Positions 5,052-61,574 of a DNA stretch of 64,000 nt are shown here, piece by piece (position 1 is the first letter of the stretch; every line of letters begins with the position of its first letter). The stretch spans positions 146,320,001 to 146,384,000 of the forward strand of contig NC_042997.1 in NCBI RefSeq assembly GCF_006345805.1, read 5' to 3'. Both the position numbers and the translations under genes were made by a program. The notes under the pieces were generated by a model. It ran no database searches, was not told the DNA's origin, and saw only the letters and a program-made list of their open reading frames with translations. This DNA is from Octopus sinensis. Taxonomy: Eukaryota.

Positions 5052-5643
5052 AAGTCGGCGTGCTGGCAGAAACGTTAGCACGCCGGGCGAAATGCATAGC
5101 GGTATTTCGGCTGCCGTTACGTTGTGAGTTCAAATTCCGCCGAGGTCGACTTTGCCTTTCATCCTTTCGGGGTCGATAAATTAAGTACCAGTTAAGCACT
5201 GGGGTCGATATAATCGACTTAATACCTATGTCTGTCCATGTTTGTCTCCTCTATGTTTAGCCCCTTGTGGGTAATAAAGAAATAGGTATTTCGTCTGTCG
5301 TTACGTTCTGAGTTCAAATTCCGCCGAGGTCGACTTTGCCTTTCATCCTTTCGGGGTCGATTAAATAAGTACCTGTTACGCACTGGGGTCGATGTAATCG
5401 ACTTAATTCCTTTGCCTGTCCTTGTTTGTCCTTTCTGTGTTTAGCCCCTTGTGGATAGTAAAGAAATAGGTATTTCGTCTGTCTTTACGATCTGAGTTCA
5501 AATTTCGCCGTGGTCGACTTTGCCTTTCATCCTTTCAGGGCCGATAAATTAAGTACCAGTTGCATACAGGGGTCGTTCTAATCGTCTCCCCACCCCCAAC
5601 CACCAAACAAAAATTTTCGGGCCTTGTGCCTAGAGTAGAAAAT
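5052..5643 (+). mobile_element. SINE family B trimer with 17-bp TSD
   Basis: Three GTTCAAATT(C/T)CGCCG(A/T)GGTCGACTTTGCC units. The direct repeat AATATCGAACTCCTTCC occurs at 5035-5051 and 5644-5660. Confidence 0.9.
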
Positions 5644-5989
5644 AATATCGAACTCCTTCCTTCGCCAAAAGCCAATCGCATAAGAATTGTCATTCACTGA
5701 CAGTACCCAAGCATGGCCATAGCCTTTGGGCTGAAACGCATCAAAGAATAAAAGAATACACGCACACATACACGCGCGCGCGCTCACATATACACACAAT
5801 ACATATACAGTTAAAACATATACGTATGGTAGCTTGCTTAGTGTACTCTATCGAAAACCGCTATTTGGTCCAGGATGTTGTCTTCATATAAACTAAACGA
5901 ACAATACTGACTGGTATAGTGGCCGAAAATCCAACCCATGTTTAATGTTTTTTTTATGCTTTTTTATTGCTTTGTTGTTGCTCCTATTG

Positions 5990-13674: not shown

Positions 13675-13850
13675 GGGAATTAAGTCGATTACATCGATCC
13701 CAATGTTCAATTGCTACTTATTTTATTGAGTCCGAAAGGATGAAACGCAAATTCGACCTCGGCGGAATTTGAACTCAGAACGTACAGACGGGCGAAACGC
13801 CGCTAAGCATTTTGCCCGGCGTGCTAACGATTCTGCAAGCACACCGCCGT
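13675..13850 (-). mobile_element. SINE family B monomer
   Basis: Reverse complement of head and core. Confidence 0.85.
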
Positions 13851-20860: not shown

Positions 20861-21559
20861 CTACATTAATAACTCTCCAATCTATGCCAGCATGGAACAT
20901 AGACGTGAAGTGGAATGTTAAAAGAAAGTTTTCAGCTCATATATGTATATTGAGTACACGTCATTCAAAAACATGTTTTGTCTAGTCTATTTCATGCAGA
21001 AATACACAGATGCAGAAGATAGTAAACAATGAAAACAACTTTGTAACGGAAATTATGTTTCTCAATACGACGGGCTGAAAGTAAATAAAACTTTTTTAAC
21101 GGAAAATAAAGAATTGTACGAGTTGAAGCAAAATTTGTCACTCAGTGAACCAAAGAGCCAGTGTCGAAGAAACCTGACAAAAAAACGTCAATAGAAAAAC
21201 ACAAAACTGTTGCAAAAGTAAATAAGAATTTTTTAGGGAAATTTACTAAATGAACGGATTTAAGTAAAAATTTTAAAGTCACTTCTGTCAGTAAATCTTG
21301 AATTTACTTTTATCAGTAATTCCGTCAACAAAACATAAACATTGTAAAAGTAAATAAGAAATTTGTAGGCAAATTTAACGAAGTATACTGAATGAAGTGA
21401 AATTTATGAAGTTACTTCGGTCAGTAAATTATAAAATTACTTTCATCAGTAATTGTTAATTTCTTTCTGTCAGTAATTTGTCGTTGTTGTTTGTAAATAA
21501 CAATTGAAAACTTACAGAGAAAAGAATAGCGTCTGAAAAATGAAAGTGAAAACAATAGA

Positions 21560-22205
<646 letters not shown>

Positions 22206-22944
22206 AAATGTTTCTATAAGAAAGGTGAAGAATAGAATTTTGAAGAAAGAAATATATAAGAAGTTGTAACATTCATGACAAAACAAAAACAAAAAAAAAC
22301 AACAAACAAACAAAAATGCGACTGAAATTAAGAAGTGGTTTAAATGTAAATATTCAATACATGTTGTTGTTACGTCAGTGACGCTAGAAAATCGGAAGTA
22401 AATATTTTAAAGAACTTTCAAAGACGTGAATCTAATATAAAAAGCAATATTACTTATTTTTAATAAAAAAATCAAATGAATAACCTACAATGTGTCCGAG
22501 GACAAATTATTCATGCATCACAAGTATGAAAGTAATTGGTGAAGCCATTTTCACGTAGAAATCAATACACACACATCTCTATTTTACATATTAGATATAT
22601 ACATGTATGTATATACATACACACACACATATACACACATATACATATATATATATATACTTATATATATGTATATATATATGTATGTATGCATGTATAT
22701 ATACATATATATATATATTAATCAATATAGGGTGGCAAAAAAAAAATTTTGTAGAATTTTTTTGCCACCAGCGGCCTAGTGGGAAAAAATTAAATAGTCA
22801 TAGACCATTTTTAAGTTCAACATCAACAATCAAGGAACGGCCATAATAGGCCATTCACCCACTAGAAATAACAGCCAAAGCTTCAACCGCAAATAAAAGT
22901 CAATTCCGTAAACAGGAGAAAATTTAAAAAACATTTACCCTGTG

Positions 22945-23051
22945 ATTTCTTATACGATGCACCGTTTCATCTGCTGTTTCATGGTAAACTAACCTGATTA
23001 AATTAAATCAAGCCAATCTTCCATAGGCCCTCAGATTCTTCAGTAAGAAAT
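22945..23051 (-). ncRNA. Type I hammerhead ribozyme, intact core (unit 1)
   Basis: Reverse complement of the 107-nt reference motif. Predicted cleavage between 22953 and 22952. Confidence 0.9.
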
Positions 23052-23441
23052 AGCCACAAGTCGGAACAGATATTTTCACGAGGCATTTCCGACCCTGCCA
23101 AGGTAATATCTGACCTAAAATTTTCAAATCATCGCACTCGCGCCAAATTTATCGGCAGCAAATAAATATAAGCCGTCGATTCCATTACGGAATTAACCAG
23201 AAAATTCATAATTAATCAATATAGGGTGGCAAAAAAAAAAAAATTTTGTAGAATTTTTTTGCCACCAGCGGCCCAATGGGAAAAAATTAAATAGTCATAG
23301 ATCATTTTTAAGTTCAACATCAACAATCAAGGAACGGCCATAATAGGCCATTCACCCACTAGAAATAACAGCCAAAGCTTCAACCGCAAATAAAAGTCAA
23401 TTCCGTAAACAGGAGAAAATTTAAAAAACATTTACCCTGTA

Positions 23442-23547
23442 ATTTCTTATACGATGCACCGTTTCATCTGCTGTTTCATGGTAAACTAACCTGATTAAAT
23501 TAAATCAAGCCAATCTTCCATAGGCCCTCAGATTCTTCAGTAAGAAT
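23442..23547 (-). ncRNA. Type I hammerhead ribozyme (unit 2), 1-nt deletion in helix I
   Basis: Core intact. TAAGAAT instead of TAAGAAAT at 23541-23547 (possible homopolymer error). Confidence 0.85.
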
Positions 23548-23936
23548 AGCCACAAGTCGGAACAGATATTTTCACGAGGCATTTCCGACCCTGCCAAGGT
23601 AATATCTGACCTAAAATTTTCAAATCATCGCACTCGCGCCAAATTTATCGGCAGCAAATAAATATAAGCCGTCGATTCCATTACGGAATTAACCAGAAAA
23701 TTCATAATTAATCAATATAGGGTGGCAAAAAAAAAAATTTTGTAGAATTTTTTTTTCCACCAGCGGCCTAGTGGGAAAAAGTTAAATAGTCATAGACCAT
23801 TTTTAAGTTCAACATCAACAATCAAGGAACGGCCATAATAGGCCATTCACCCACTAGAAATAACAGCCAAAGCTTCAACCGCAAATAAAAGTCAATTCCG
23901 TAAACAGGAGAAAATTTAAAAAACATTTACCCTGTA

Positions 23937-24043
23937 ATTTCTTATACGATGCACCGTTTCATCTGCTGTTTCATGGTAAACTAACCTGATTAAATTAAAT
24001 CAAGCCAATCTTCCATAGGCCCTCAGATTCTTCAGTAAGAAAT
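23937..24043 (-). ncRNA. Type I hammerhead ribozyme, intact core (unit 3)
   Basis: 107-nt reference motif, reverse complement. Confidence 0.9.
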
Positions 24044-24432
24044 AGCCACAAGTCGGAACAGATATTTTCACGAGGCATTTCCGACCCTGCCAAGGTAATA
24101 TCTGACCTAAAATTTTCAAATCATCGCACTCGCGCCAAATTTATCGGCAGCAAATAAATATAAGCCGTCGATTCCATTACGGAATTAACCAGAAAATTCA
24201 TAATTAATCAATATAGGGTGGCAAAAAAAAAAATTTTGTAGAATTTTTTTTGCCACCAGCGGCCTAGTGGGAAAAAATTAAATAGTCATAGACCATTTTT
24301 AAGTTCAACATCAACAATCAAGGAACGGCCATAATAGGCCATTCACCCACTAGAAATAACAGCCAAAGCTTCAACCGCAAATAAAAGTCAATTCCGTAAA
24401 CAGGAGAAAATTTAAAAAACATTTACCCTGTA

Positions 24433-24544
24433 ATTTCTTATACGATGCACCACCGTTTCATCTCTGCTGTTTCATGGTAAACTAACCTGATTAAATTAAA
24501 TCAAGCCAATCTTCCATAGGCCCTCAGATTCTTCAGTAAGAAAT
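24433..24544 (-). ncRNA. Type I hammerhead ribozyme (unit 4), 5 nt of insertions in helices II and III
   Basis: GCACCACCGTTTCATCTCTG instead of GCACCGTTTCATCTG; core nucleotides retained. Confidence 0.75.
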
Positions 24545-24932
24545 AGCCACAAGTCGGAACAGATATTTTCACGAGGCATTTCCGACCCTGCCAAGGTAAT
24601 ATCTGACCTAAAATTTTCAAATCATCGCACTCGCGCCAAATTTATCGGCAGCAAATAATATAAGCCGTCGATTCCATTACGGAATTAACCAGAAAATTCA
24701 TAATTAATCAATATAGGGTGGCAAAAAAAAAAATTTTGTAGAATTTTTTTTTGCCACCTGCGGCCTAGTGGGAAAAAATTAAATAGTCATAGACCATTTT
24801 TAAGTTCAACATCAACAATCAAGGAACGGCCATAATAGGCCATTCACCCACTAGAAATAACAGCCAAAGCTTCAACCGCAAATAAAAGTCAATTCCGTAA
24901 ACAGGAGAAAATTTAAAAAACATTTACCTGTA

Positions 24933-25038
24933 ATTTCTTATACGATGCACCGTTTCATCTGCTGTTTCATGGTAAACTAACCTGATTAAATTAAATCAAG
25001 CCAATCTTCCATAGGCCCTCAGATTCTTCAGTAAGAAT
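24933..25038 (-). ncRNA. Type I hammerhead ribozyme (unit 5), 1-nt deletion in helix I
   Basis: Core intact; TAAGAAT at 25032-25038. Confidence 0.85.
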
Positions 25039-25424
25039 AGCCACAAGTCGGAACAGATATTTTCACGAGGCATTTCCGACCCTGCCAAGGTAATATCTGA
25101 CCTAAAATTTTCAAATCATCGCACTCGCGCCAAATTTATCGGCAGCAAATAAATATAAGCCGTCGATTCCATTACGGAATTAATCAGAAAATTCATAATT
25201 AATCAATATAGGGTGGCAAAAAAAAAAATTTTGTAGAATTTTTTTGCCACCAGCGGCCTAGTGGGAAAAAATTAAATAGTCATAGACCATTTTTAAGTTC
25301 AACATCAACATCAAGGAACGGCCATAATAGGCCATTCACCCACTAGAAATACAGCCAAAGCTTCAACCGCAAATAAAAGTCAATTCCGTAAACAGGAGAA
25401 AATTTAAAAAACATTTACCCTGTA

Positions 25425-25531
25425 ATTTCTTATACGATGCACCTTTTCATCTGCTGTTTCATGGTAAACTAACCTGATTAAATTAAATCAAGCCAATCTT
25501 CCATAGGCCCTCAGATTCTTCAGTAAGAAAT
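25425..25531 (-). ncRNA. Type I hammerhead ribozyme (unit 6), C15.2-to-A variant
   Basis: GATGCACCTTTTCAT at 25437-25450, the same variant as the copy at 25998-26104. Confidence 0.8.
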
Positions 25532-25997
25532 AGCCACAAGTCGGAACAGATATTTTCACGAGGCATTTCCGACCCTGCCAAGGTAATATCTGACCTAAAA
25601 TTTTCAAATCATCGCACTCGCGCCAAATTTATCGGCAGCAAATAAATATAAGCCGTCGATTCCATTACGGAATTAACCAGAAAATTCATAATTAATCAAT
25701 ATAGGGTGGCAAAAAAAAATTTTGTAGAATTTTTTTGCCACCAGCGGCCTAGTGGGAAAAAATTAAATAGTCATAGACCATTTTTAAGTTCAACATCAAC
25801 AATCAAGGAACGGCCATAATAGGCCATTCACCCACTAGAATAACAGCCAAAGCTTCAACCGCAAATAAAAGTCAATTCCGTAAACAGGAGAAAATTTAAA
25901 AAACATTTACCCTGTAATTTCTTATACGATGTACCGTTTCATCTGCTGTTTCAGGGTCGGAAATGCCTCGTGAAAATATCTGTTCCGACTTGTGGCT

Positions 25998-26104
25998 ATT
26001 TCTTACTGAAGAATCTGAGGGCCTATGGAAGATTGGCTTGATTTAATTTAATCAGGTTAGTTTACCATGAAACAGCAGATGAAAAGGTGCATCGTATAAG
26101 AAAT
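25998..26104 (+). ncRNA. Type I hammerhead ribozyme, C15.2-to-A variant (helix III weakened)
   Basis: Same motif but GAAAAGGTGCATCGTA instead of GAAACGGTGCATCGTA. Confidence 0.8.
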
Positions 26105-26494
26105 TACAGGGTAAATGTTTTTTAAATTTTCTCCTGTTTACGGAATTGACTTTTATTTGCGGTTGAAGCTTTGGCTGTTATTTCTAGTGGGTGAATGGCC
26201 TATTATGGCCGTTCCTTGATTGTTGATGTTGAACTTAAAAATGGTCTATGACTATTTAATTTTTTCCCACTAGGCCGCTGGTGGCAAAAAAAAATTCTAC
26301 AAAATTTTTTTTTTTGCCACCCTATATTGATTAATTATGAATTTTCTGGTTAATTCCGTAATGGAATCGACGGCTTATATTTATTTGCTGCCGATAAATT
26401 TGGCGCGAGTGCGATGATTTGAAAATTTTAGGTCAGATATTACCTTGGCAGGGTCGGAAATGCCTCGTGAAAATATCTGTTCCGACTTGTGGCT

Positions 26495-26601
26495 ATTTCT
26501 TACTGAAGAATCTGAGGGCCTATGGAAGATTGGCTTGATTTAATTTAATCAGGTTAGTTTACCATGAAACAGCAGATGAAACGGTGCATCGTATAAGAAA
26601 T
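26495..26601 (+). ncRNA. Type I hammerhead ribozyme (reference copy)
   Basis: Helix I ATTTCTTA 26495-26502 / TAAGAAAT 26594-26601. Core CTGAAGA 26503-26509. Helix II ATCTG 26510-26514 / CAGAT 26573-26577. GAAA 26578-26581. Helix III (A)CGG-TGCA-TCG(T) 26581-26592. Cleavage triplet GTA ends at 26593. Confidence 0.92.
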
Positions 26602-26987
26602 TACAGGGTAAATGTTTTTTAAATTTTCTCCTGCTTACGGAATTGACTTTTATTTGCGGTTGAAGCTTTGGCTGTTATTTCTAGTGGGTGAATGGCCTAT
26701 TATGGCCGTTCCTTGATTGTTGATGTTGAACTTAAAAACGGTCTATGACTATTTAATTTTTTCCCACTAGGCCGCTGGTGGCAAAAAAATTCTACAAAAT
26801 TTTTTTTTTGCCACCCTATATTGATTAATTATGAATTTTCTGGTTAATTCCGTAATGGAATCGACGGCTTATATTTATTTGCTGCCGATAATTTGGCGCG
26901 AGTGCGATGATTTGAAAATTTTAGGTCAGATATTACCTTGGCAGGGTCGGAAATGCCTCGTGAAAATATCTGTTCCGACTTGTGGCT

Positions 26988-27094
26988 ATTTCTTACTGAA
27001 GAATCTGAGGGCCTATGGAAGATTGGCTTGATTTAATTTAATCAGGTTAGTTTACCATGAAACAGCAGATGAAACGGTGCATCGTATAAGAAAT
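26988..27094 (+). ncRNA. Type I hammerhead ribozyme, intact core
   Basis: Same 107-nt motif as 26495-26601; carries the C variant that gives a G-C pair in upper helix I. Confidence 0.9.
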
Positions 27095-27337
27095 CACAGG
27101 GTAAATGTTTTTTAAATTTTCTCCTGTTTACGGAATTGACTTTTATTTGCGGTTGAAGCTTTGGCTGTTATTTCTAGTGGGTGAATGGCCTATTATGGCC
27201 GTTCCTTGATTGTTGATGTTGAACATATATATATATATATATTTATATATATAAGCACTCACATAAATAAAGAAGAAAATAAAGATGTATTCATATACAG
27301 ATACATACATACATACATACATACATACATACATACA

Positions 27338-27370
<33 letters not shown>

Positions 27371-27387
27371 TATATATATATATATAT

Positions 27388-27678
27388 CGTGAAGGCACGT
27401 GGCATAGTGGAAAGAGTATTCCGCTCACGATCATAAGACCATGAGTTTGATTTCCGTTGGCTCGTTATGTCCTCCGGCAAGTCAATTTATTTGGTCCAGT
27501 CCCCTCAGTTGGCAAAAATGATTTGCACCTGTTATTCAAAGGACTGGCCTTGTCATATTCTGCGTCACGCTGAATTTCCCTGGGAACTACATTAAGTGTA
27601 CCCTTGTTCGTGGAGTGTTCAGTCATTTGCACGTTAATTTCACTTGCAGACTTTTCTGTAGATCGGATCAACTGGGAC
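27388..27678 (+). mobile_element. SINE family C (tRNA-like head, CORE/V-like body)
   Basis: GTGGCATAGTGG A-box-like and GAGTTTGATTTCC B-box-like motifs, then GTCC(T)...GGCAAGTCA...CTCAGTTGGCAAAAATGA. Confidence 0.6.
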
Positions 27679-28380: not shown

Positions 28381-28977
28381 GCAGATTTGTGTAGGTTTAC
28401 AACTATTCGTACTGATGTATTTGTAGAGACAACTTCATAAGCTGCGAGCTGTGACGAAACAATTCACCATCGAAATCATTTTTGACATAAACTGTATTCA
28501 GTGGAATTAATTTTCTGTATTTAGTAAATTTTGGAAACTTCAACCAAAAAGTGTGTGTGTGCTGGGAAAGGTACGGCCGAATGTTTAAGAAGCTTTGTAA
28601 CGATGAGGTCACGCTCGATCCCACTATTTGACGTAACGGGCTATTGTCGTCTGCTGTAGCCTGACAGACGACAACTTGCAGGGTATCAGTGTGTTGGGAA
28701 AGGTACGGCCGAATGTTTAAGAAGCTTTGTAACGATGAGGTCACGCTCGATCCCACTATTTGACGTAACGGGCTATTGTCGTCTGCTGTAGCCTGAGATG
28801 TAGTCAGACATGAGTGAAAATGGACAGACGACAACTTGCAGGGTATCAGTCGAGTCGGTTACACTTGTATTTCGAAAGACCATCATGTCACGCTGATTAT
28901 ACCCAAGGCTTACGTTAAGGGAACACATATCTGCAAGGTAATCATCTTTACACTTATATGCTTATAGTATAAGCACG

Positions 28978-32684: not shown

Positions 32685-33665
32685 AATAATCCTTTCTACT
32701 GGAAACCCAAGGCCTCAAATTTTGGGGGAAGGCAGTAAATCGATTACATCGACCACAGTAAGTAACTGGTACTAATTTTATCGATCCCGAGAGGATGAAA
32801 TGCAAAGTCGACCTCGGCGGAATTCAAGCTCAAAACCTAACGGCGGACGAAATACCGCTGAGCTTCGCCCAGCGTTCTAAGAATTCTGTCAGATCGCTGC
32901 CTTGATCATAATAACAATGGTTTCAAATTTTGCCACAAGAGCAACAAGTTTGAGGGAGGGGAGAGTGGATTATATCGACCCTAGTACTCTACTGGTACTT
33001 ATTTTATCAACCCCGAAAGGATGAAAGGCAAAGTCAACCACGGTAGAATTTGAACTCAGAACGTAAGGACGGACGAAACGCCACTAAGCATTTTGCTTGG
33101 CGTGCCAGCGATTCTGACTGCTAGCCACCTTAATCATAATAATGATAATCATTTCTATTAAAGGCACAAGGCCTGAAATTTGTGGGGAGGGGACTAGTTG
33201 GTTACATCCACCCCTGTGTTTCACTGGTACTTAATTTATCGACCCCGAAAGGATGGAAGGCAAGTCGACCTCGGAGGAATTTGAACTCAGAACACGAAGA
33301 CAGACGAAATACCTATTTCTTTACTACCCACAAGGGGCTAAACACAGAGGGGGCGAAGAAGGACAGACAAACGGATTAACCGATTATATCGACCCCAGTG
33401 CGTAACTGGTACTTATTTAATCGACCCCGAAAGGATGAAAGGGAAAGTTGACTTCGGCGGAATTTAAACTCACAACGTAACGGCAGACGAAATACTGCTA
33501 AGCATTTCACCAGGTATGTTAACGATTCTGGCTGCTCAGCTTCTTTGCCAGCTCGCTGACTTATCATAGTTCCCAACTTTGCTACAAAGGCAACAATTTT
33601 GGGGGAAGGGGCTAAGTCGATTACATCGACCTCAGTGTTCAACTGCTACTTATTGTATCGCTGCC
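32685..33665 (-). mobile_element. Cluster of SINE family B copies (two monomers, one dimer, one tail fragment)
   Basis: Repeated reverse-complement GCAAAGTCGACCTCGGCGGAATTTGAACTC-like cores, separated by AAT-rich tails. Confidence 0.85.
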
Positions 33666-37931: not shown

Positions 37932-39205
37932 CAGTAGAACTTTAATTTGGACTTCCTCTAAACACGGGCTTTTTCATAACTCAAATTTAATTTGTATAAT
38001 CGATGCAGAGTTGTAATGAGAAAGTTTAAATAGTTTTAGTCAGGTATTGTACTGAATGGATGAATCAACACTTGTTCTCAGAATGGTTCATACAAGAATT
38101 TGTGCCAGCTGTACAAAAGCGCTCTCACAAATTAGATAAATCTGATTCAAAGTGCCTGCTGCTATTAGTCAATTGTAGAGCACATCCTCACGAGTCAAAA
38201 TTAGTGTCATCATACGGGAATGTTTTTGTGTGCTACTTACCACCGAATATGACATCTCTCATACAACCTATGGAGGAAGGGATTATTTGGAACTTAAAAT
38301 GTTAGTATAGGCGATTTCTAGCGCAATTTTACCATTAAAGATGCCATTTTTTTTTTATCTCGCAAGCGCATGAATCAGGTTCGAGCAGGCACATTAACAA
38401 AAACGTGGGGAAAATTATATCCAGCGTCTAGTGCTCCTGAAGTGAAAGAAGCAGAGAATGAATCCGGAGTACAAAATATTCTTGAAACTACACCATTTCC
38501 AACCAAATACGCTGTTCTTCAATCACTTGATGCAAAGAAATGTGGGTGCGACATGATGAAGAAACCACTGAACAATGTCCCGAAGAAAATAATGGTCATG
38601 GAATTAGCAACAGCGACAGCTCCCATTCGAGTGAGTCTAATGTAAATGGCCAAGAACACTCTAATGAGGAAATATGGGATAATACAGAGAAATCGATGGA
38701 GATTATGATAAAATGTCTTGAAAGAAATCCTTACTTTAGTGACAACTATGTTTTGCAAGCAATGTTCCTTCAAAAGGATATGATCATAAAGCGACTACAA
38801 CACCAAGAAATAGTGAAGTTTCGCGATCGCTTGAGGAATGTAATGGCAATCCCCGTGAGCTCGACAAATGAAGACGGAAACGAAAGTGAAGAAACTCATT
38901 CAATCAATGAATAAAAGTATTCTACATAGATAATTGGTTATTAAATGCTGTTAATTTATCTAATAAATACCTAACTACTAACATTATCTAATATTAATTT
39001 ATTTTCATTTTTTTTCCTTGCAGTATTTAACGATTCTTTAAAATATATAATGCACTCACCTTAATATATACATCAAATACTAACGGGGGTACCCGGAAAT
39101 GTAAAAGGAAATATTTTAAATACCTTTATGTATTTTCTTCCCGTAATTTGAACTGCGTCCTCAAACTTGAACATAGCACACGTTCAAATTAGAGGAGTTC
39201 TACTG
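37932..39205 (+). mobile_element. Decayed pogo/Tigger transposon with DDE_1 transposase pseudogene
   Basis: TIRs CAGTAGAACT / AGTTCTACTG. ORF 38060-38305 reads WMNQHLFSEWF...LLLLVNCRAHP...LPPNMTSLIQPMEEGII, the DDE_1 signature, with stops and frameshifts. Confidence 0.9.
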
Positions 39206-42659: not shown

Positions 42660-42840
42660 TATTGGCGTCGAGTTGGTAGAATCATGAGCACGCCGGGCAA
42701 AATACAATTACGTTCTGAGTTCAAATTCCACCGAGGTCGACTTCATCCTTTTGGGATCGATAAAATAGGTACCAGTTGAGCACTGGAGTCGATGTAATCG
42801 ACTTACCCCTCCACCGAAATTGTTGGTCTTGTGCCAAACA
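42660..42840 (+). mobile_element. SINE family B monomer (another partial copy at ~42480-42560)
   Basis: GTTCAAATTCCACCGAGGTCGAC core. Confidence 0.8.
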
Positions 42841-43570
42841 TTTGGCATAAGGCTGTATCTTTTTTTCTTAAACCTGGTTGAAGAACTATTTCGAGTATAC
42901 TTTCTCAAACCGGAGAGATAAGAAAAACAAAATGCACTTAAATGTTTTTGTTAAAAGTAGTGGTATAGTAACAGTATGTGCCACCTGGGTCAGTCCATGA
43001 GTGTGTCGCCTCTAGTGAGCTAACCAACCATTTACATGCTTATACAACAAGCAAGCCCAAAATCCCACCTCCATAAGAGCGTCCCCTGAGACGGATCGGC
43101 AATTCGCTCCACCTTGGGTAGGTTACAGGTTGTAAGGTAGTTTGCCGTCTTACATTTAAAAGACTGTACAAGTTGTAAAATATTTACAGACTATGTGAGA
43201 CTACCTTAACGATGTTTCCAGAGTATAGTATTGATATTTCATGTAGATTAATTATATGTGTAAATCCTGGGATTTTGCATTTATATTTAATCACACATTT
43301 TGTTGATCATTTTCAAGGCAGCTGTAATTATATGAATCGTTTCTTTTCTTTTATTACCTATTATAAAAGGGACAATACAATATGATCTGGATTCATATAC
43401 AACAGATGGTATAAAAATTTATAATGACAAAATGAAAAAAAAAGACCGAATGGGACACAGAAGACAATAATATACAATGAAAGACACTATGAGATTTAAA
43501 AGACAGGTATGCTCCGACCCCACGAGCTCTGTCTTCTCAACCGACACTTTTGGTAATCTCTATGACGTAC

Positions 43571-44848
43571 TCACGCAGGGCCTTTCACTCCCAGCATACG
43601 TGTTACACGCGTCCATTTTTTTTTTATTAACATACACTCTGACAGACACCTCCTTTCCAACCCCACCTTCCTTTTCAGGTGAAAAGTGAAAACATTCACC
43701 AAAGCAAGGCCGAAGACAAAGCTGTCTATCACAGTACCTTTCATTCTCAACTTACATATCACCTCTCTCGCAATTGCTACTACAACGAGAAAACAATTAC
43801 CTTCTTCCGTAAGGAAATCCGGTGGGTTAATTTTTAAAATTGACTCAGACAATAGCTGTACTCTTCTCCCATCTGACAACAGGTGTTCTGCATAAGTCCA
43901 CGCTTCTGATATACCCGGACCCTGAACAATAGCGTGCAGGACCATTTCCACGTCCCGCCCGCATCTTGGACAGGGCGACAGCCCAGACTGGCTGTGTCTG
44001 GTGAGCTTCTCGGTAACACTGCCAGGCCAAAGACTTTTGGAAGTTATCCAGTGTCTTCGGCCCGAATGTTCTTCGGAACAGGCTAACTGATTGTTATCGA
44101 AACTTAGGATCCTTCCAAGGGCATCATCATTTCCAGCCTCTACCAACCTCCTCTAGTAAGCCGCAGTGGTACCGAAACCGCTGGCGTTGCCCGATTTGCG
44201 GAATTGGAGAAGAGCCTTGCGGCACTCCGTATACAGGGTACCCAATCTCGATCTTCGACGAAACCAGTTTTCTCTACCACCAAAACTAGTAAAGCTGGGG
44301 AACATCCGTTTAGCAAGCGAACACCACACCCGTTTACAATCCAAGTAGAGCCAGAGATGCTTCAGCATCAGCGCATGCTTGCGCATCAACAGCCAAGGCA
44401 TCCCTAACCCACCCTTTAACGGATTTTGACAGCAAATAGAACGCCTTACAAGTGGGGTGGAGTTCTTCCACAAACAGCGAAAGATTTGCCTCTCCAACTT
44501 GCTCAACCACGAATCAGGACAAGGAACGACGGTTAGGCGGTAAACGATGACCGATGCGATAAACACTCCGCCCTCCCTTCCAAGGATAGCCACCGCCAGG
44601 TAACGATGGTCTAAACTATCGAATGCTTTAGCTTGATCTAAATGGACCAGTGCCCCACCTTTGCCAGAATCTTTACCATACCCTTCTTCTACGGTGTAGC
44701 GTATAAGATGGTTCTACCGGGGACCGCACAGGTTTGTGCTTCCCCGATCAGGCCATCCGCGACACGCGTCAATCTTTTTGCTAGCACCTTGGCCAAAGTT
44801 TTCATCTCTGCGTTCAGCAGAGTGATGGGCCTAAAATTATCTATTCTG
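43571..44848 (-). mobile_element. Decayed Tx1/L1-clade LINE ORF2 fragment (RT N-terminus, post-RT region, C-terminal zinc-binding motif)
   Basis: NFRPITLLNAEMKTLAKVLAKRL...QTCAVPGRTI...DQAKAFDSLDHRYL, then FRCLWK...GGLGMP, then CPRCGRDVEMVLHAIVQ. Stops, a frameshift and loss of the RT core. Confidence 0.9.
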
Positions 44849-50419: not shown

Positions 50420-50885
50420 AATCTGTCATCCCATAAATAATGCGGTTTTTTTCAATTGCATGAACTAAAAGTCGGAGTGGGGTGGAATAAACTATATGCA
50501 TCAACTTGCTATAAAAGCTGCTAGTAATTTTACCAAGTACTTATTCTTAGCGCAGGTTTTGAAGAGTGCAATTCGATTTTGACAGATTTTCAAAGCTATA
50601 ATGGAAGTTACAAAGGAGCATATTCTGTTTATTTTGCTTTATGAGTTCAATAAAGGCAATAACGCAACGGAAAGTGCGAGGAATATCAATGCAGTATATG
50701 GGGATCGGACAATAAGTGTAAAGCAGTGTGAATGGTGGTTCCAGAAATTCCGAGCCGGAAACTACAGCCTAGAAAACAAGCCTCGTCCTGGAAGATCTGC
50801 AGAGCTCGACAAGGACATTCTGCAAGCTCTGGTGGAACAAAACCCTATCGTAACTGATGAGGAACAAACAGACAAGCTTGGGTTG
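50420..50885 (+). mobile_element. 5' fragment of a mariner transposon (N-terminal HTH of transposase)
   Basis: ORF from 50601, MEVTKEHILFILLYEFNKGNNATESARNINAVYG...WFQKFRAGNYSLENKPRPGR, is mariner/SETMAR-type HTH. It is truncated by a SINE fragment at ~50885. Confidence 0.9.
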
Positions 50886-52442
50886 GTCTACCAAATCCAC
50901 ACAATACTTTGTATGGTCTGTGGCCATAGTAAAAGACACTTGCCTAAGGTGCCACTCAGTGGAAATGACATGGGGATTCGAGAATATCAACAATTTATGC
51001 AGTTCCCTTCGTTAGTGTAAATATCATCATTGGTATATGATTCCTAGTTATTTCAATGTCTGTTTGTCAAGCTATTTTTCTGGTGCCTCTCTCTCTCTCC
51101 CTCCCTCCCTCCATCTCTCTCTCTTTCTCTTTCCCTCTTCTTTTCCCTCTTTCCTCCTCACTCTCACTCTCTTTCTCGTGGTTCGTTAGACTGCCCCACA
51201 AAGCCATCTATATTTTTATCGTTCTTACTGCTGCGGTTGTTGTTGTTGTTGTTGGTGGTGGTGGTATTTAGCCTTACTTTCACCGTAATTCTTATAGTAG
51301 ATAACTCGAACTGACAGCAGCGACAATTTATTACCTCAAATGTAATCCAGTCATAACTATACAAAGATTATTTTCTATATAAGGGAAAATATTGACCAGC
51401 ATATACTTTTATAAAAATGGAAACATGTGATTTGAGGGAGACTTCGCTGCTATTTCAAATAGTTCGAGCCCCTCATAGATGTTTCGTTATTGGCCCGCAC
51501 AACCAATGTTGACCTTACACGAGCAAATATGTACATAGGATACATAAGGTACGTGGGGTACATTTGAATGAATACGTCTAACTTCCGGTACGATTGACTT
51601 AGTCATATAACAACAATATATAACGAGTTGTATAGAATTACTTACCAAGCTGCTAGTTAAGAGTTTTAGATTACATTCTATTTTACACCTACTCACTTGA
51701 CTCCTTTCCTACAAACCAGAGTAGAGGCTTTTCTCGTGGTCACTCTGTCTGCTGGAAATAGCAGCTAATGTGCCTTAAATAACATCCCATAGTTTTAAAT
51801 AATAGAAAATAAGGGGACACTTGATAATGTACTCCTGATTATATGACACAAAAGGGAAGAAAAGAGTAGTCAGGATTAAGCAGAGTGGAATCTCATAAAT
51901 CAAGGGTAGTACCCGATACGGTTTTAAAAGGGCTAAAAATATCAAATATAACAATAACAGCAACAGGAACGACTCCTACGATCCCGCAAGGGTGTCTCGA
52001 CACTCTCACACATGTTAGATATAGCATCCAAATTTTCTTTAAATCTAGCAGTATCGTAAAAACGGAAAGACACAACATATCAAAAGGAAACAAAAAAAAA
52101 TGTCACGAGCAAATTCCTTTGAATATAAATCTCAGGGCAGCCTCTGGGCTAGATAACTCCATGTACACTCTGGGGTAAACAAACAAATATTGACTCATGA
52201 CTAAATAACTTCATGTGTAAATGAACTTCGGTTATAGTTGCAAGGATGTACTCATAACCAGATCCATATAGCCACTAGAGGTCTAATTTTAGTACATTTA
52301 TCTCCATAGACAAGATAACTCAGACCCAAGGGCAGTAACAATATACCGTAGGATGAACCTGTGCAGCTCAGTTCCTGTATACATATTCACAAACATGCAA
52401 ATATTACGCACACACACACATACATACCATATACATATTATA

Positions 52443-57129: not shown

Positions 57130-57650
57130 AAACTACGTATGAAGAAAAGACATTAGAAATCTATGGAAAAAGTTCCTATTAAATGACGAAGATAAATTCA
57201 TCGTTATATACATACATACATACATACACACGCGCGCGCATATATATATATATACACACACACGATCGAAAAGATGAATGACAATGAACTTTTTGTGTGA
57301 ACTGTCTGTGACAGACCATAACTGTCTTTTGCTGGGCTCAAATCTCACCTTCGAAACCATGGAAAGTAAACCTCCACCAACTATTCTGCCTACATCCCTG
57401 TGCACACCTTTAAATGCAGTGTATGCCAGAATGTTTGCAAATCCAACGGAGGCCTTAAAAGACATTTTAAGATCCACAAAGATCAGAATTTATCTGCAGC
57501 TCTTGGTGGTCCAAATTCGATGTGCAATCTGTGTGGTTGTCTTTTCAGAACATTGTCTGGCGTAACAAGACACATCAGATGCCATGATGGTGCTAAAGTG
57601 TAGGTACAAGAGGTGGTCAAACTCTGCATAATGAGTAGACAACCACCATA
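57130..57650 (+). mobile_element. 3' end of an RTE-like LINE with three C2H2 zinc fingers
   Basis: One frame 57274-57603: (C)TVCDRP(C)LSFAGLKSHLRNH, CSVCQNVCKSNGGLKRHFKIH, CNLCGCLFRTLSGVTRHIRCH, with stops in finger 1. Upstream IRNLWKKFLLN. A short 3' UTR ends in (TA)n. Confidence 0.6.
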
Positions 57651-59733: not shown

Positions 59734-60102
59734 GAAGATCGGTGAGCTGGCAGAAACGTTAGCATGCCGGGTGAAATGCGTGGCCGTATTTCCTCTGTCG
59801 CCACGTTCTGAGTTCAAATTCCGCCGAGGTCGACTTTGCCTTTCATCCTTTTGGGGTCGATGTAATCGACTTAATCCGTTTGTCTGTCCTTGTTTGTCCT
59901 CTCTGTTTAGCCCCTTGTGAGTAGTAAATAAATAGGTATTTAGCCCATCGCTACGTTCTGAGTTCAAATTCCGCCAAGGTCGACTTTGGTTTTCATCATT
60001 TCAGGGTCGATAAAGTAAGTACCAGTTGTGTACTCGGATCGATTGTAATCGACTGGCCCCTTCCCCCAAAATTTCAGGCCTTGTGCCTATAATAGAAAAG
60101 AT
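59734..60102 (+). mobile_element. SINE family B dimer
   Basis: Two units; the first has a deletion between two GGGGTCGAT direct repeats. Confidence 0.85.
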
Positions 60103-60958
60103 TATTATTATTGTTGTTATTATTATTATTATTATTATCATATTATTATTATCAAGACTCTCATCTTTGCAACGAAAGTTTTGGAACCAAGCTTGAATTG
60201 CACGTTTATTGCAGTTCCGTGGTCAATTGCATGTTTGACGTCACGAGTAATTCTTGTTACATTGAGTTCTCGAATTTGTTTTTGTTCACTTTTATTTTGA
60301 CAACCTAAGATAATTAAGAATAAATGCTGAAAGCAAAACCATTAACATAAACCAACGCAACAAATTATGTATAAAATTACATGTGCCTAGCTAAATAAAA
60401 TTCGAAAATAAGCATCAAAATTTAAAATAAGAAATATCGCAATTACCTTATTATACTAAGGGAAACGTCCTGTTGTCGTCTCTTCCCAATATGCTAATTT
60501 TGGTTTTGGCGTATACCGGCCAGTTAGTGACCGTTTGACCCTGAATAAATTTCTGTTGCATTATTTCACTTGTATTTATTCCAGTCACTCTTTGAGTTAT
60601 ACCTTTCTATTTTTTTAGTTGGGTTGACCCTTTACAAGATCATGAAGACTGATAGGAGGGAAGATGGAAGTAATCCTGAAACGACGTATCAAAAATGACC
60701 ACAAATGATATGCAGCAATTGAATAAAATTCAATCTTTAAAGTTTCGTATTGTAGCAAAACTCGAAACCGAGTAGTCAAATTAAGAAGTTTAAGTTACGC
60801 CATAGTACAAACTTATTGACAGAAAAGGTCGAGTTATTGACTAATCAGCAACCAGACTTCACGTGATAGGTTCTTCTATATCGTTCTGGAACATGTCAGT
60901 ACAAGGGCTGTTTGTAATATAAGAGGCTTGCTTTTAGCGTCAATTTTCTAAGTGTGTG

Positions 60959-61574
60959 AAGGCGGCGAGCCAGCAGAGACGTTAGCACGCCGAGCGAAGT
61001 GCTTCGCGGTATTTCGCCCGTCGCTACGTTCTGAGTTCAAATTCCGCCGAGGTTGACTTTGCCTTTCATCCTTTGGGGGGTCGATAAATTAAGTACCAGT
61101 TACGCATTGGGGTCTATGTAATCGACTTAATCCCTTTGTCTATCCTCGTTTGTCCCCTCTATGTTTAGCCCCTTGTGGGCAATAAAGAAATAAGAAACGT
61201 TAGCACGCCGAGTGAAATGCTTAGCGGTATTTCGTCTGTCGTTACGTTCTGAGTTCGAATTCCGCAGAGGTCGACTTTGCCTTTCATCCTTTCGGGATCG
61301 ATTGAATAAGTACCAGATACGCACTGGGGTCGATGTAAGCGACTTAATCCGTTTGTCTGTCCTTGTTTGTCCCCTCTGTGTTTGGCCCCTTGTGGGTAGT
61401 AAAGAAATAGGTATTTTGTCTGTCTTTACGTTCTGAGTTCGAATTCCGCCGAGGTCGACTTTGCCTTTCATTCTTTCGGGGTCGAGTAAATAAGTACCAA
61501 CTGCGTACTGGGGTCGATCTAATCGACTGGTCCCCTCCCCCAAAATTTTGGGCCTTGTGCCTAGAGTAGAAAAG
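60959..61574 (+). mobile_element. SINE family B trimer with 17-bp TSD (1 mismatch)
   Basis: Three units. AATTTTCTAAGTG(T/C)GTG at 60942-60958 and 61575-61591. Confidence 0.9.

What the first reader, a model, noticed from the sequence alone, without database searches (positions are those of the whole stretch)
22717..27224. Tandem array of ~495-bp units each encoding a type I hammerhead ribozyme (candidate octopus retrozyme / self-cleaving satellite)
Seen in sequence: nine complete copies (plus one half copy at 25917-25953) of a 107-nt motif carrying all conserved hammerhead core nucleotides. It has CUGAAGA and GAAA, a GUA cleavage triplet, a perfect 8-bp helix I (AUUUCUUA/UAAGAAAU), a 5-bp helix II and a 4-bp helix III. 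Predicted cleavage sites are 492-500 nt apart. Established knowledge: tandem monomers with one type I hammerhead each define newt satellite 2, Schistosoma Sm-alpha, cricket pDo500 and metazoan non-LTR retrozymes. Their multimeric transcripts self-process to monomers that can circularise. Inference: this is a young, non-coding, ribozyme-processed mobile RNA family, large for its class and probably mobilised in trans by an autonomous retroelement. I do not know of this family having been described, but I could not search.
Basis: partly seen in the sequence, partly recalled or inferred. Interest (0 to 1): 0.95.

Follow-up and report, generated by a model that had tools for sequence, protein, structure and literature searches.

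The report
Hammerhead-ribozyme tandem repeat (retrozyme) in octopus-like DNA
A 4.5-kb block of about 494-bp non-coding repeats, each carrying a hammerhead self-cleaving RNA motif, looks like a previously unlisted member of the known animal 'retrozyme' class of mobile circular-RNA elements. It is inserted head-to-head in a (TA)n microsatellite, the way Penelope-like retroelements insert.

Summary
Window 22717-27224 is a 98%-identical repeat of about 494-bp, 36% GC, non-coding units. It has nine full hammerhead motifs and one half motif, and predicted cleavage sites lie 492-500 nt apart. A descriptor scan found no such motif in 300 shuffled windows.

- The block is two inverted arms, not one array. 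Six and a half units have the ribozyme on the minus strand (22717-25953) and 2.6 units have it on the plus strand (25954-27224). Their 5' ends meet head-to-head, and both outer ends abut (AT)n.
- All nine copies keep the catalytic core, but only four match the consensus motif throughout. Two carry C15.2-to-A, two have a 1-nt deletion in helix I, and one has two insertions.
- No Rfam hammerhead model matches, even at E<=10. Helix II carries a roughly 58-nt extension and starts with A-U rather than G-C.
- 494 bp is within the published size range (51-972 bp), so it is not large for its class.

Best reading: a new family of metazoan non-LTR retrozyme in an octopus-related genome. The inverted, 5'-truncated architecture in a (TA)n target matches published Penelope-like element insertion structure. 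Cleavage, circular RNA and mobility are untested. No other copies could be retrieved.

The parts
22717..25953 (-). Left arm: 6.5 head-to-tail units in ribozyme polarity on the minus strand. From the junction outward these are L0 (29 nt), L1-L6 (492, 492, 500, 496, 495, 497 nt) and L7 (236 nt). The 3' end of the arm is the outer end at 22717.
   Evidence: TRF; sequence; unit splitting and alignment
25954..27224 (+). Right arm: 2.6 units in ribozyme polarity on the plus strand. These are R0 (143 nt, 5'-truncated), R1 (497 nt), R2 (493 nt) and R3 (138 nt). The 3' end of the arm is the outer end at 27224.
   Evidence: TRF
25952..25955 (.). Head-to-head inversion junction. The left arm is 5'-truncated inside helix II of its first hammerhead (alignment column about 476). 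The right arm is 5'-truncated at column about 352. There is a 2-nt 'CA' microhomology.
   Evidence: Sequence read directly and unit alignment
26483..26607 (+). Consensus hammerhead, with predicted cleavage after A26593. In order it has: distal helix I CUUGUG/UACAGG, a GCU bulge, helix I AUUUCUUA/UAAGAAAU, the core CUGAAGA, helix II AUCUG/CAGAU plus a roughly 58-nt imperfect hairpin extension, GAAA, helix III ACGG/UCGU closed by the palindromic loop UGCA, and then GUA with cleavage after the A.
   Evidence: The catalytic three-way fold costs only 1.5 kcal/mol more than the minimum free energy fold (-34.7 vs -36.2 kcal/mol).
26976..27100 (+). Hammerhead with consensus core and helices. A U-to-C change at 27095 turns a G.U pair into G-C in distal helix I. 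Cleavage is predicted after 27086.
25986..26110 (+). Hammerhead with C15.2 changed to A (A.G mismatch in helix III), probably impaired. Cleavage site after 26096.
   Evidence: fails the descriptor
25419..25543 (-). Hammerhead with the same C15.2-to-A change. Cleavage site at 25433.
   Evidence: fails the descriptor
24927..25050 (-). Hammerhead with a 1-nt deletion in the 5' strand of helix I (AUUCUUA). Cleavage site at 24941.
   Evidence: helix I scored as 6 bp
24427..24556 (-). Hammerhead with an AG insertion in the 3' strand of helix II and a GUG insertion in helix III or its loop. The core is intact. Cleavage site at 24441.
23931..24055 (-). Consensus hammerhead. Cleavage site at 23945.
23436..23559 (-). 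Hammerhead with a 1-nt deletion in helix I. Cleavage site at 23450.
22939..23063 (-). Hammerhead with consensus core, plus the same U-to-C (G.U to G-C) change in distal helix I as the outermost right-arm copy. Cleavage site at 22953.
25910..25953 (-). 3' half of a hammerhead (helix II 3' strand, GAAA, helix III, GUA, helix I 3' strand), cut off by the inversion junction. It carries a G-to-A change in loop 3.
26280..26321 (+). Perfect 15-bp hairpin inside each unit (GGUGGCA9 / U9GCCACC); the copy in unit R1 is given here.
   Evidence: the repeat finder I1; present in the minimum free energy folds
22595..22716 (.). TA/TACA-rich microsatellite that abuts the left outer end. The last 12 bases are pure (AT)n.
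   Evidence: TRF
27225..27253 (.). (AT)n microsatellite that abuts the right outer end.
   Evidence: TRF

Best explanation
This is one genomic locus of a metazoan non-LTR retrozyme family in an octopus-related genome. It is a non-coding repeat of about 494 bp with 36% GC, and each unit encodes one type I hammerhead ribozyme.

Inferred life cycle, by analogy with the coral, mussel and axolotl retrozymes:
- A multimeric transcript of ribozyme polarity cleaves itself after GUA in each unit.
- This yields monomers of about 494 nt. Their ends are held together by the 8+6-bp helix I.
- The monomers are ligated into highly self-paired circular RNA, by a host tRNA ligase or by the ribozyme's reverse reaction.
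- The RNA is copied and integrated in trans by a Penelope-like element (PLE) reverse transcriptase/GIY-YIG endonuclease.

What is shown here: the motif, the repeat, the lack of coding capacity, the predicted structure and the insertion architecture. That architecture is two arms whose 5'-truncated ends meet head-to-head and whose 3' ends abut a (TA)n microsatellite.

What is inferred: cleavage, circularisation, transcription and PLE-mediated mobilisation.
For: - Repeat: 98% identical units of 492-500 nt.
- Ribozyme core: C3-A9 (CUGAAGA), G12-A14, A15.1-U16.1 and A17 are invariant in nine copies, and the helices are arranged I-core-II-GAAA-III-GUA-I' with helix I open, which is type I.
- Chance: no descriptor hits in 300 shuffled windows, against 7 hits in the array.
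- Folding: RNAfold independently predicts helices I and II and the long helix II hairpin (z = -3.9). The catalytic fold lies 1.5 kcal/mol above the minimum free energy fold.
- Helix I change: the one substitution in distal helix I converts G.U to G-C.
- Unit properties: GC is 36% and the longest stop-free frame is 52 codons. There are no protein relatives.
- Circular monomer: -139.7 kcal/mol, 60% paired, z = -5.1.
- Definition: the locus meets the published operational definition, a TRF repeat with at least two consecutive units holding a complete type I hammerhead. It also matches the class description of low GC, no LTR/PBS/PPT and species-specific sequence, with molluscs included.
- PLE link: published PLE insertions are partial tandems with an inverted 5'-truncated copy adjacent at the 5' end, and they favour microsatellites, (TA)n for Naiads. 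This locus has that layout. Pure (AT)n>=6 runs cover only 3% of the window.
- Host: transposon relics in the window match Octopus sinensis DNA.
Against: - No Rfam hammerhead covariance model matches, at gathering score or at E<=10, even when only 151 nt are searched.
- The pair at the base of helix II is A10.1-U11.1, not the usual G-C. Helix II also carries an unusual extension of about 58 nt, so activity may be low.
- Whether the GCU bulge (8 bp from the core) and the AG/AG internal loop (5 bp from the core) make the usual loop 1-loop 2 contact cannot be judged.
- Five of nine copies carry helix changes, and variants are no rarer in the ribozyme than elsewhere in the unit: about 7 of 27 events fall in 25% of the length. 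There is therefore no sign of selection at this locus.
- Only one locus is visible. There are no other copies in the 64 kb, none in the searchable DNA collections and none in a 21-kb O. sinensis stretch.
- No PLE is present in the window.
- The two shared substitutions at mirrored places in the arms do not fit two independent cDNAs without extra events.
Confidence: 0.78

Rival explanations
1. This is a locally amplified satellite DNA that carries a hammerhead relic. The repeat and its inverted arm arose purely at the DNA level, through unequal crossing-over and a fold-back inverted duplication at a fragile (TA)n tract. The ribozyme is no longer active and there is no mobile RNA stage.
For: - The two arms share two substitutions at mirrored positions: C15.2 to A next to the junction, and U to C in the outermost units. 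This suggests one arm was copied from the other or from one template.
- Five of nine ribozymes are altered and there is no sign of selection.
- The A10.1-U11.1 pair and the lack of any Rfam match allow for weak or absent activity.
- Only one locus was found.
Against: - The arms are not mirror images. Their outer ends fall at different unit positions (column 236 vs 138), their inner ends differ too (column 476 vs 352), and the unit numbers are 6.5 vs 2.6.
- All invariant core nucleotides are intact in nine of nine copies.
- Classical 'satellites' with type I hammerheads have been shown to be expressed retrozymes.
Confidence: 0.12
2. The units are not an independent non-autonomous family. They are a pseudo-LTR (terminal, non-coding) segment of an autonomous Penelope-like element, left here as a tandem and inverted array without the coding body.
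For: - Type I hammerheads lie in PLE pseudo-LTRs.
- PLE insertions are heavily 5'-truncated partial tandems with inverted copies in microsatellites.
- Xenopus retrozyme families are sister to PLE pseudo-LTRs.
Against: - PLE hammerheads are usually minimal versions that lack helix III and tertiary contacts. Here helix III has 4 bp, and helices I and II are long.
- Eight complete monomers with regular 492-500-nt spacing and no trace of RT or GIY-YIG coding sequence in or beside the array.
Confidence: 0.1
3. The hammerhead resemblance is a chance or spurious match in an ordinary repeat, and there is no ribozyme.
For: No Rfam hammerhead hit. The base pair of helix II is non-canonical.
Against: - No comparable motif appears in 38 Mb of shuffled sequence, even at looser helix thresholds than the ones observed.
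- All core positions are correct.
- Thermodynamic folding finds helices I and II unaided.
- The genomic context is the classical one for type I hammerheads.
Confidence: 0.03
4. The inverted arrangement, and perhaps the unit counts, are an assembly artefact of long-read sequencing through a tandem repeat. The real locus is a single head-to-tail array.
For: - Many differences between units are single-base indels in homopolymers (alignment columns 190-191, 209-212, 402), which are typical of long-read errors.
- The PLE literature notes that such structures trouble assemblies.
Against: - The arms differ in length and in private substitutions.
- The junction is a clean breakpoint with 2-nt microhomology.
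- Unique flanks continue on both sides.
Confidence: 0.08

Closest known systems
Metazoan non-LTR retrozymes (Cervera & de la Pena 2020, PMC7229834): coral Acropora 220-240 bp, mussel Mytilus 350-390 bp, axolotl 330/350 bp
   Same: - Head-to-tail repeats of a few hundred bp, each with one type I hammerhead.
- Low GC, no ORF, and no LTR, PBS or PPT.
- Highly self-paired monomer RNA.
- Species-specific sequence.
- A mollusc member (mussel) is known, and its hammerhead also lacks the archetypal loop-loop nucleotides.
   Different: - The unit is longer (494 bp) than those examples, though inside the 51-972 bp range reported in 2026.
- Helix II has an extension of about 58 nt and an A-U base pair at its foot.
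- Helix III is comparatively stable: 4 bp plus a palindromic UGCA loop.
- Rfam models do not detect the motif.
- Expression and circular RNA are unverified.
- The locus is two inverted arms.
Penelope-like element (PLE) insertions (Craig et al. 2021, PMC8557442)
   Same: Partial tandem copies, with an inverted 5'-truncated copy adjacent at the 5' end. Insertion into microsatellites, (TA)n for Naiads.
   Different: - No RT or GIY-YIG ORF, and the unit is only 494 bp.
- The hammerhead is a full three-helix motif, not the minimal PLE type.
- No 30-40-bp tail could be recognised.
- Similarity to any PLE pseudo-LTR is untested.
Newt satellite 2, Schistosoma Sm-alpha and cricket pDo500 hammerhead repeats
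   Same: Type I hammerhead, one per repeat unit, in tandem or dispersed repeats of animals. A palindromic loop 3 would allow the dimeric, extended helix III mode described for newts.
   Different: - Those have a very short helix III and a compact helix II.
- From my own knowledge, Sm-alpha is SINE-like with pol III boxes. Here no tRNA-like part was found, and T-runs of 7-10 on both strands argue against pol III.
- There is no sequence relation; no direct sequence comparison with these repeats was run, and no Rfam hammerhead model matched.
Plant LTR retrozymes (Cervera et al. 2016, PMC4918200)
   Same: Non-autonomous, hammerhead-processed, circular-RNA-forming retroelements.
   Different: Plant elements have type III hammerheads in LTRs, PBS/PPT, 4-bp target-site duplications, GC above 55% and Gypsy-dependent mobilisation. 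None of these features is seen here.

Membership tests
Hammerhead ribozyme, type I | Conserved catalytic core: C3 U4 G5 A6 N7 G8 A9, G12 A13 A14, A15.1-U16.1, H17 (not G) | tested here: met
   CUGAAGA, GAAA, the A-U closing pair and GUA are present and invariant in all nine copies.
Hammerhead ribozyme, type I | Three helices around the core, with helix I open-ended and helices II and III closed | tested here: met
   - Helix I: 8 bp, then a GCU bulge, then 6 bp.
- Helix II: 5 bp plus a long hairpin.
- Helix III: 4 bp with a UGCA loop.
These are intact in 4 of 9 copies and altered in 5.
Hammerhead ribozyme, type I | G10.1-C11.1 pair at the base of helix II (usual but not invariant in natural hammerheads; stated from my own knowledge) | tested here: not met
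   The pair is A10.1-U11.1 in all copies. An axolotl retrozyme hammerhead with a U.U mismatch at this position is described.
Hammerhead ribozyme, type I | Recognition by the curated Rfam hammerhead covariance models | tested here: not met
   No hammerhead family matched at gathering score on the whole window, at E<=10 on 6 kb, or at E<=10 on 151 nt. The helix II extension of about 58 nt is the likely reason, but that could not be tested because custom sequences cannot be submitted.
Hammerhead ribozyme, type I | Tertiary contact between a helix I loop or bulge and loop 2 | tested here: inconclusive
   Candidate elements exist: a GCU bulge 8 bp from the core, and an AG/AG internal loop 5 bp from the core. 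Their geometry cannot be assessed from sequence.
Hammerhead ribozyme, type I | Site-specific Mg2+-dependent self-cleavage | not testable with these tools
   This needs in vitro transcription.
Metazoan non-LTR retrozyme | Tandem repeat with a complete type I hammerhead in at least two consecutive units (operational definition of Li et al. 2026) | tested here: met
   TRF repeat. Consecutive intact motifs lie at 26483-26607 and 26976-27100.
Metazoan non-LTR retrozyme | Non-coding, low-GC unit without LTR, PBS or PPT | tested here: met
   GC is 36% and the longest stop-free frame is 52 codons. No protein relatives were found. No terminal repeats other than the units themselves.
Metazoan non-LTR retrozyme | Monomer RNA highly self-paired | tested here: met
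   Linear monomer z = -5.5. Circular monomer 60% paired, z = -5.1. The antisense strand is also structured (z = -4.4 to -4.7), so this feature is weakly discriminating.
Metazoan non-LTR retrozyme | Expressed as monomeric linear and circular RNA | not testable with these tools
   No transcriptome was searchable by nucleotide sequence. ORF-based look-ups in Logan and other assemblies found nothing.
Metazoan non-LTR retrozyme | Multiple loci in the genome (mobility) | not testable with these tools
   There is one locus in the window and none in 21 kb of O. sinensis. The searchable DNA collections hold no cephalopod genomes.
Penelope-like-element type insertion | Partial tandem plus an inverted 5'-truncated copy adjacent at the 5' end | tested here: met
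   The arms meet 5'-to-5' at 25953/25954 and both are 5'-truncated within a unit.
Penelope-like-element type insertion | Microsatellite target, often (TA)n | tested here: met
   Both outer ends abut (AT)n, and the joined flanks would read as one (TA)n tract. Such tracts cover 3% of the window.
Penelope-like-element type insertion | Sequence similarity of the unit to a PLE pseudo-LTR of the same genome | not testable with these tools
   No octopod PLE sequence was available, and no PLE is present in the window.

The most novel reading that the evidence does not exclude
The octopod unit carries a structurally divergent but active type I hammerhead, with a helix II extension of about 58 nt and an A10.1-U11.1 pair, that standard covariance-model annotation misses. 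This locus also preserves the footprint of a Penelope-like integration of a retrozyme RNA: head-to-head, 5'-truncated arms in a (TA)n target. If so, it would be direct structural evidence that animal retrozymes are mobilised by PLE machinery. That evidence would be independent of the phylogenetic argument published in 2026. It would also imply that retrozyme censuses based on Rfam-type models under-count such families.
Probability: 0.3. Interest if true: 0.55.

Novelty: new member of a known kind. Interest (0 to 1): 0.4.

Why it matters
Retrozymes are a recently recognised class of abundant circular-RNA-forming mobile elements in animals. A cephalopod family is not described in any paper I could search.

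Three details would interest specialists if confirmed:
- The hammerhead escapes all Rfam models because of a long helix II insertion and an A-U base pair. This bears on how completely such ribozymes are annotated.
- The insertion layout matches Penelope-like elements, so it gives a locus-level test of the proposed PLE dependence of animal retrozymes.
- A 494-nt self-processing unit could be a natural scaffold for circular RNA expression.

Otherwise this is an expected kind of element in an invertebrate genome.

Tried and rejected
- Rfam scans gave no hammerhead or other ribozyme family at gathering score or at E<=10. The only hits were microsatellite-driven miRNA false positives in the flanks and a CRISPR-repeat chance match.
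- I looked for other copies through ORFs of the unit. Exact look-ups of the 34-aa and 39-aa ORFs found nothing. A word-indexed search with the 52-aa frame found nothing. A full HMMER scan of 1.84 billion representatives with the 46-aa frame gave one marginal, unrelated hit (E = 1.8e-4, 37% identity).
- Exact DNA patterns from the 5' and 3' ribozyme halves gave no matches in metagenome contigs or prokaryote genome contigs. These collections are not expected to hold cephalopod DNA, so the negatives say little.
- A gapped core pattern in viral contigs gave two related phage contigs. They lack helix I, so I rejected them as chance matches.
- A tRNA or SINE origin was tested with ARAGORN, which found nothing.
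- A search for a repeat shared between the left and right flanks, as a possible carrier element, gave only weak matches of about 73% to interspersed repeats.
- A PLE or other autonomous partner was not found in the window. Pfam detected only pogo DDE_1, mariner HTH_48 and a weak C2H2.
- A higher-order (3-unit) periodicity, suggested by the shared helix I deletion in L2 and L5, is not supported by any other variant.
- Microhomology between the (TA)n target and the unit at the two 3' ends is at most 2 nt, which is uninformative (read).

Full report
**What is there**

Tandem Repeats Finder reports two adjoining arrays: 22717-25957 (period 496, 6.5 copies, 98% matches) and 25952-27224 (period 493, 2.6 copies, 98%). 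GC and AT skew change sign near 26000. Reading the sequence and splitting it at the predicted cleavage sites shows these are the same unit in opposite orientation.

- The left arm (22717-25953) carries the ribozyme polarity on the minus strand: units L0 (29 nt), L1-L6 (492, 492, 500, 496, 495, 497 nt) and L7 (236 nt).
- The right arm (25954-27224) carries it on the plus strand: R0 (143 nt), R1 (497 nt), R2 (493 nt) and R3 (138 nt).
- In RNA polarity the two arms meet 5'-to-5' at 25953/25954, with a 2-nt CA microhomology.
- Both arms are truncated inside a unit, at different unit positions (alignment columns about 476 and 352).
- Their 3' ends point outward and also stop at different unit positions (columns 236 and 138).
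- Both outer ends abut (AT)n tracts.

The majority consensus unit is 494 nt with 36% GC. Its longest stop-free frame on either strand is 52 codons. No other copy or fragment lies elsewhere in the 64 kb.

**The hammerhead**

Nine full copies and one 3' half copy of the motif are present. In the consensus copy (26483-26607, plus strand) the order is:

- distal helix I, CUUGUG/UACAGG (6 bp, two G.U pairs)
- a GCU bulge
- helix I, AUUUCUUA/UAAGAAAU (8 bp)
- C3-A9 = CUGAAGA
- helix II, AUCUG/CAGAU (5 bp), continued through an AG/AG internal loop into a long imperfect hairpin (about 58 nt in all)
- G12-A14 = GAA
- helix III, ACGG/UCGU (A15.1-U16.1, C-G, G-C, G.U), closed by the palindromic tetraloop UGCA
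- A17, giving GUA with cleavage after A26593

The open helix is helix I, so the topology is type I. All invariant core positions are identical in the nine copies.

RNAfold, which knows nothing of the core, predicts helix I with its bulge and distal part, and helix II with its extension (-36.2 kcal/mol, z = -3.9). Forcing the full three-way junction costs only 1.5 kcal/mol (-34.7 kcal/mol).

A descriptor scan I wrote (helix I >=5 bp, CUGANGA, helix II >=4 bp, GAAA, helix III >=3 bp, UH) finds seven of the nine copies and nothing else in the window. It finds nothing in 300 first-order Markov shuffles of the window on both strands. A much looser descriptor (3/3/2 bp) gives only 27 hits in those 38 Mb. 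The motif is not a chance match.

1. The block is two inverted arms, not one array.
2. Only four copies match the consensus motif throughout: 26483-26607, 26976-27100, 23931-24055 and 22939-23063.
   - Two copies have C15.2 changed to A, which gives an A.G mismatch in helix III (25419-25543, 25986-26110).
   - Two have a 1-nt deletion in helix I (24927-25050, 23436-23559).
   - One has an AG insertion in helix II and a GUG insertion in helix III (24427-24556).
   - Many indels sit in homopolymers and may be sequencing errors.
3. Variant events are no rarer in the ribozyme than in the rest of the unit: about 7 of 27 events fall in 25% of the length. This locus gives no evidence of selection. 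With 98% identity none is expected.
4. No Rfam hammerhead model, and no other ribozyme family, matches. This holds at gathering score, at E<=10 on 6 kb and on 151 nt. The likely reasons are the helix II extension and the A10.1-U11.1 pair, but I could not submit an edited sequence to prove it.
5. 494 bp is above the 150-450 bp quoted in 2020. It is well inside the 51-972 bp range of consensus lengths reported in 2026, so it is not large for the class.

**What it most likely is**

The features match the published description of metazoan non-LTR retrozymes:

- tandem units of a few hundred bp, each with a type I hammerhead
- low GC
- no LTR, PBS or PPT
- non-coding
- monomer RNAs that are highly self-paired
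- sequences that are species-specific

Molluscs are among the hosts. The mussel has repeats of 350-390 bp whose hammerheads also lack the archetypal loop-loop nucleotides, cleave slowly, and still give abundant circular RNA. The locus also meets the operational definition used by Li et al. 2026: a TRF repeat with at least two consecutive complete type I hammerheads.

The monomer, taken from cleavage site to cleavage site, folds with z = -5.5 when linear. As a circle it gives -139.7 kcal/mol, 60% paired and z = -5.1. The antisense strand is also structured (z about -4.5), so this evidence is supportive but not specific. Each unit also holds a perfect 15-bp hairpin, GGUGGCA9/U9GCCACC.

T-runs of 7-10 on both strands, together with the absence of any tRNA-like part, argue against a pol III SINE-like origin.

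**Mechanism**

The following steps are inferred by analogy and were not tested here.

- Multimeric transcripts of ribozyme polarity cleave after GUA.
- The 8+6-bp helix I keeps the 5'-OH and 2',3'-cyclic phosphate ends of each 494-nt monomer together for ligation into a circle.
- The RNA is then reverse-transcribed and integrated in trans.

The palindromic loop 3 would also allow the dimeric, extended helix III mode known from newt hammerheads. With a 4-bp helix III, however, monomeric cleavage is plausible.

**The link to Penelope-like elements**

Craig et al. 2021 describe PLE insertions as heavily 5'-truncated partial tandems. [quoted passage not shown] They also report a microsatellite bias, (TA)n for Naiads.

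This locus has that layout. Two 5'-truncated arms are joined 5'-to-5', and their 3' ends lie in what would be a single (TA)n tract if the insert were removed. Pure (AT)n>=6 tracts cover 3% of the window, so the target is mildly non-random. Neither retrozyme paper I read mentions this architecture. It therefore adds a locus-level argument to the phylogenetic case that animal retrozymes derive from, and depend on, PLEs.

Three points weaken the link. No PLE is in the window. Similarity of the unit to a PLE pseudo-LTR could not be tested. PLE hammerheads are usually minimal, unlike this one.

**Unexplained**

The arms share exactly two substitutions, at mirrored places:

- C15.2 to A in the ribozymes nearest the junction.
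- U to C (G.U to G-C in distal helix I) in the outermost units.

This suggests a common template or exchange between the arms. Yet unit numbers and all four end points differ. A simple DNA palindrome, two independent cDNAs, or rolling-circle copying of a monomer or trimer each need extra events, such as unequal crossing-over, gene conversion or assembly error.

**Host**

A degraded non-LTR RT-like stretch (43508-44713, minus strand) has its only named protein hit in Octopus sinensis (67% identity over 44% of the query). It is 72.6% identical over 1.1 kb to O. sinensis chromosome CM016876.1. A SINE-like element present in at least 14 copies in the window matches the same O. sinensis stretch at up to 89% identity. 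The window therefore comes from an octopus relative. The species is not established.

**Searches for relatives**

- ORF-based look-ups and protein searches with frames of the unit found nothing.
- Exact DNA patterns found nothing in metagenome or prokaryote collections.
- Two phage contigs matched a gapped core pattern by chance.
- No cephalopod genome or transcriptome could be searched by DNA.

As a result, copy number, conservation, covariation and expression remain open.

**Literature**

No paper in the searchable library describes hammerhead repeats or retrozymes in cephalopods. The 2021 PLE paper says cephalopods, Octopus spp. included, harbour Naiad PLE remnants, and that Naiads lack canonical hammerheads.

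**Verdict**

The classification as a type I hammerhead retrozyme-type repeat is well supported in silico (confidence about 0.78). Activity and mobility are untested. It is a new member of a known kind. Three modestly unusual features deserve follow-up: the extended helix II with an A-U base pair, invisibility to Rfam, and the PLE-like head-to-head insertion in (TA)n. Interest is about 0.4.

Noticed in passing
window 43508-44713 (-): Degraded non-LTR retrotransposon relic, seen as RT-like ORF fragments at 44156-44713 and 43574-44152. It has no Pfam hit. It is 72.6% identical over 1.1 kb to Octopus sinensis chromosome CM016876.1 (L003:9794-10901).
   Followed up: partly
window 5131-5644, 13683-13771, 32740-33465, 42722-42835, 59815-60103, 61038-61573: A SINE-like interspersed repeat of about 90-140 bp is present in at least 14 copies on both strands. 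It is up to 89% identical to L003:3237-3369 of O. sinensis. In six-frame translation it gives the recurring peptide '...SRPRRNLNSERNDRRNT...'.
   Followed up: partly
window 38030-38302 (+) and 50583-51017 (+): DNA-transposon relics: a pogo/Tigger-type DDE_1 fragment (E = 3.7e-15) and a mariner Mos1-type HTH_48 N-terminus (E = 3.8e-20).
   Followed up: partly
window 28557-28796 and 21210-21454: Two short tandem duplications lie near the array: 132 bp x 1.8 at 99% identity, and 133 bp x 1.8 at 79%. They are unrelated to each other, to the retrozyme unit and to anything else in the window.
   Followed up: partly
window 22583-22718 and 27213-27405: TA/TACA/TG microsatellites flanking the array give spurious sub-threshold Rfam miRNA matches (mir-3149, mir-297, mir-1277 and others). 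These are low-complexity artefacts, not genes.
   Followed up: yes
window 57370-57600 (+): A short ORF shows a weak C2H2 zinc-finger match (24.1 bits, just below Pfam's cut-off of 25.2). It is possibly an exon or pseudogene fragment.
   Followed up: no
whole window: Microsatellite density is very high. There are 83 pure (AT)n>=6 runs covering 3% of the bases, plus many (ATAC)n, (ATAG)n, (AC)n and (AG)n tracts. GC is 29-41%.
   Followed up: partly
L001:4857-4923 and L002:100-166 (IMG/VR phage contigs): Two related phage contigs contain CUGAAGAAUCUG...CAGAUGAAAC with a plausible helix III but no helix I. I judged them chance matches inside phage sequence.
   Followed up: yes
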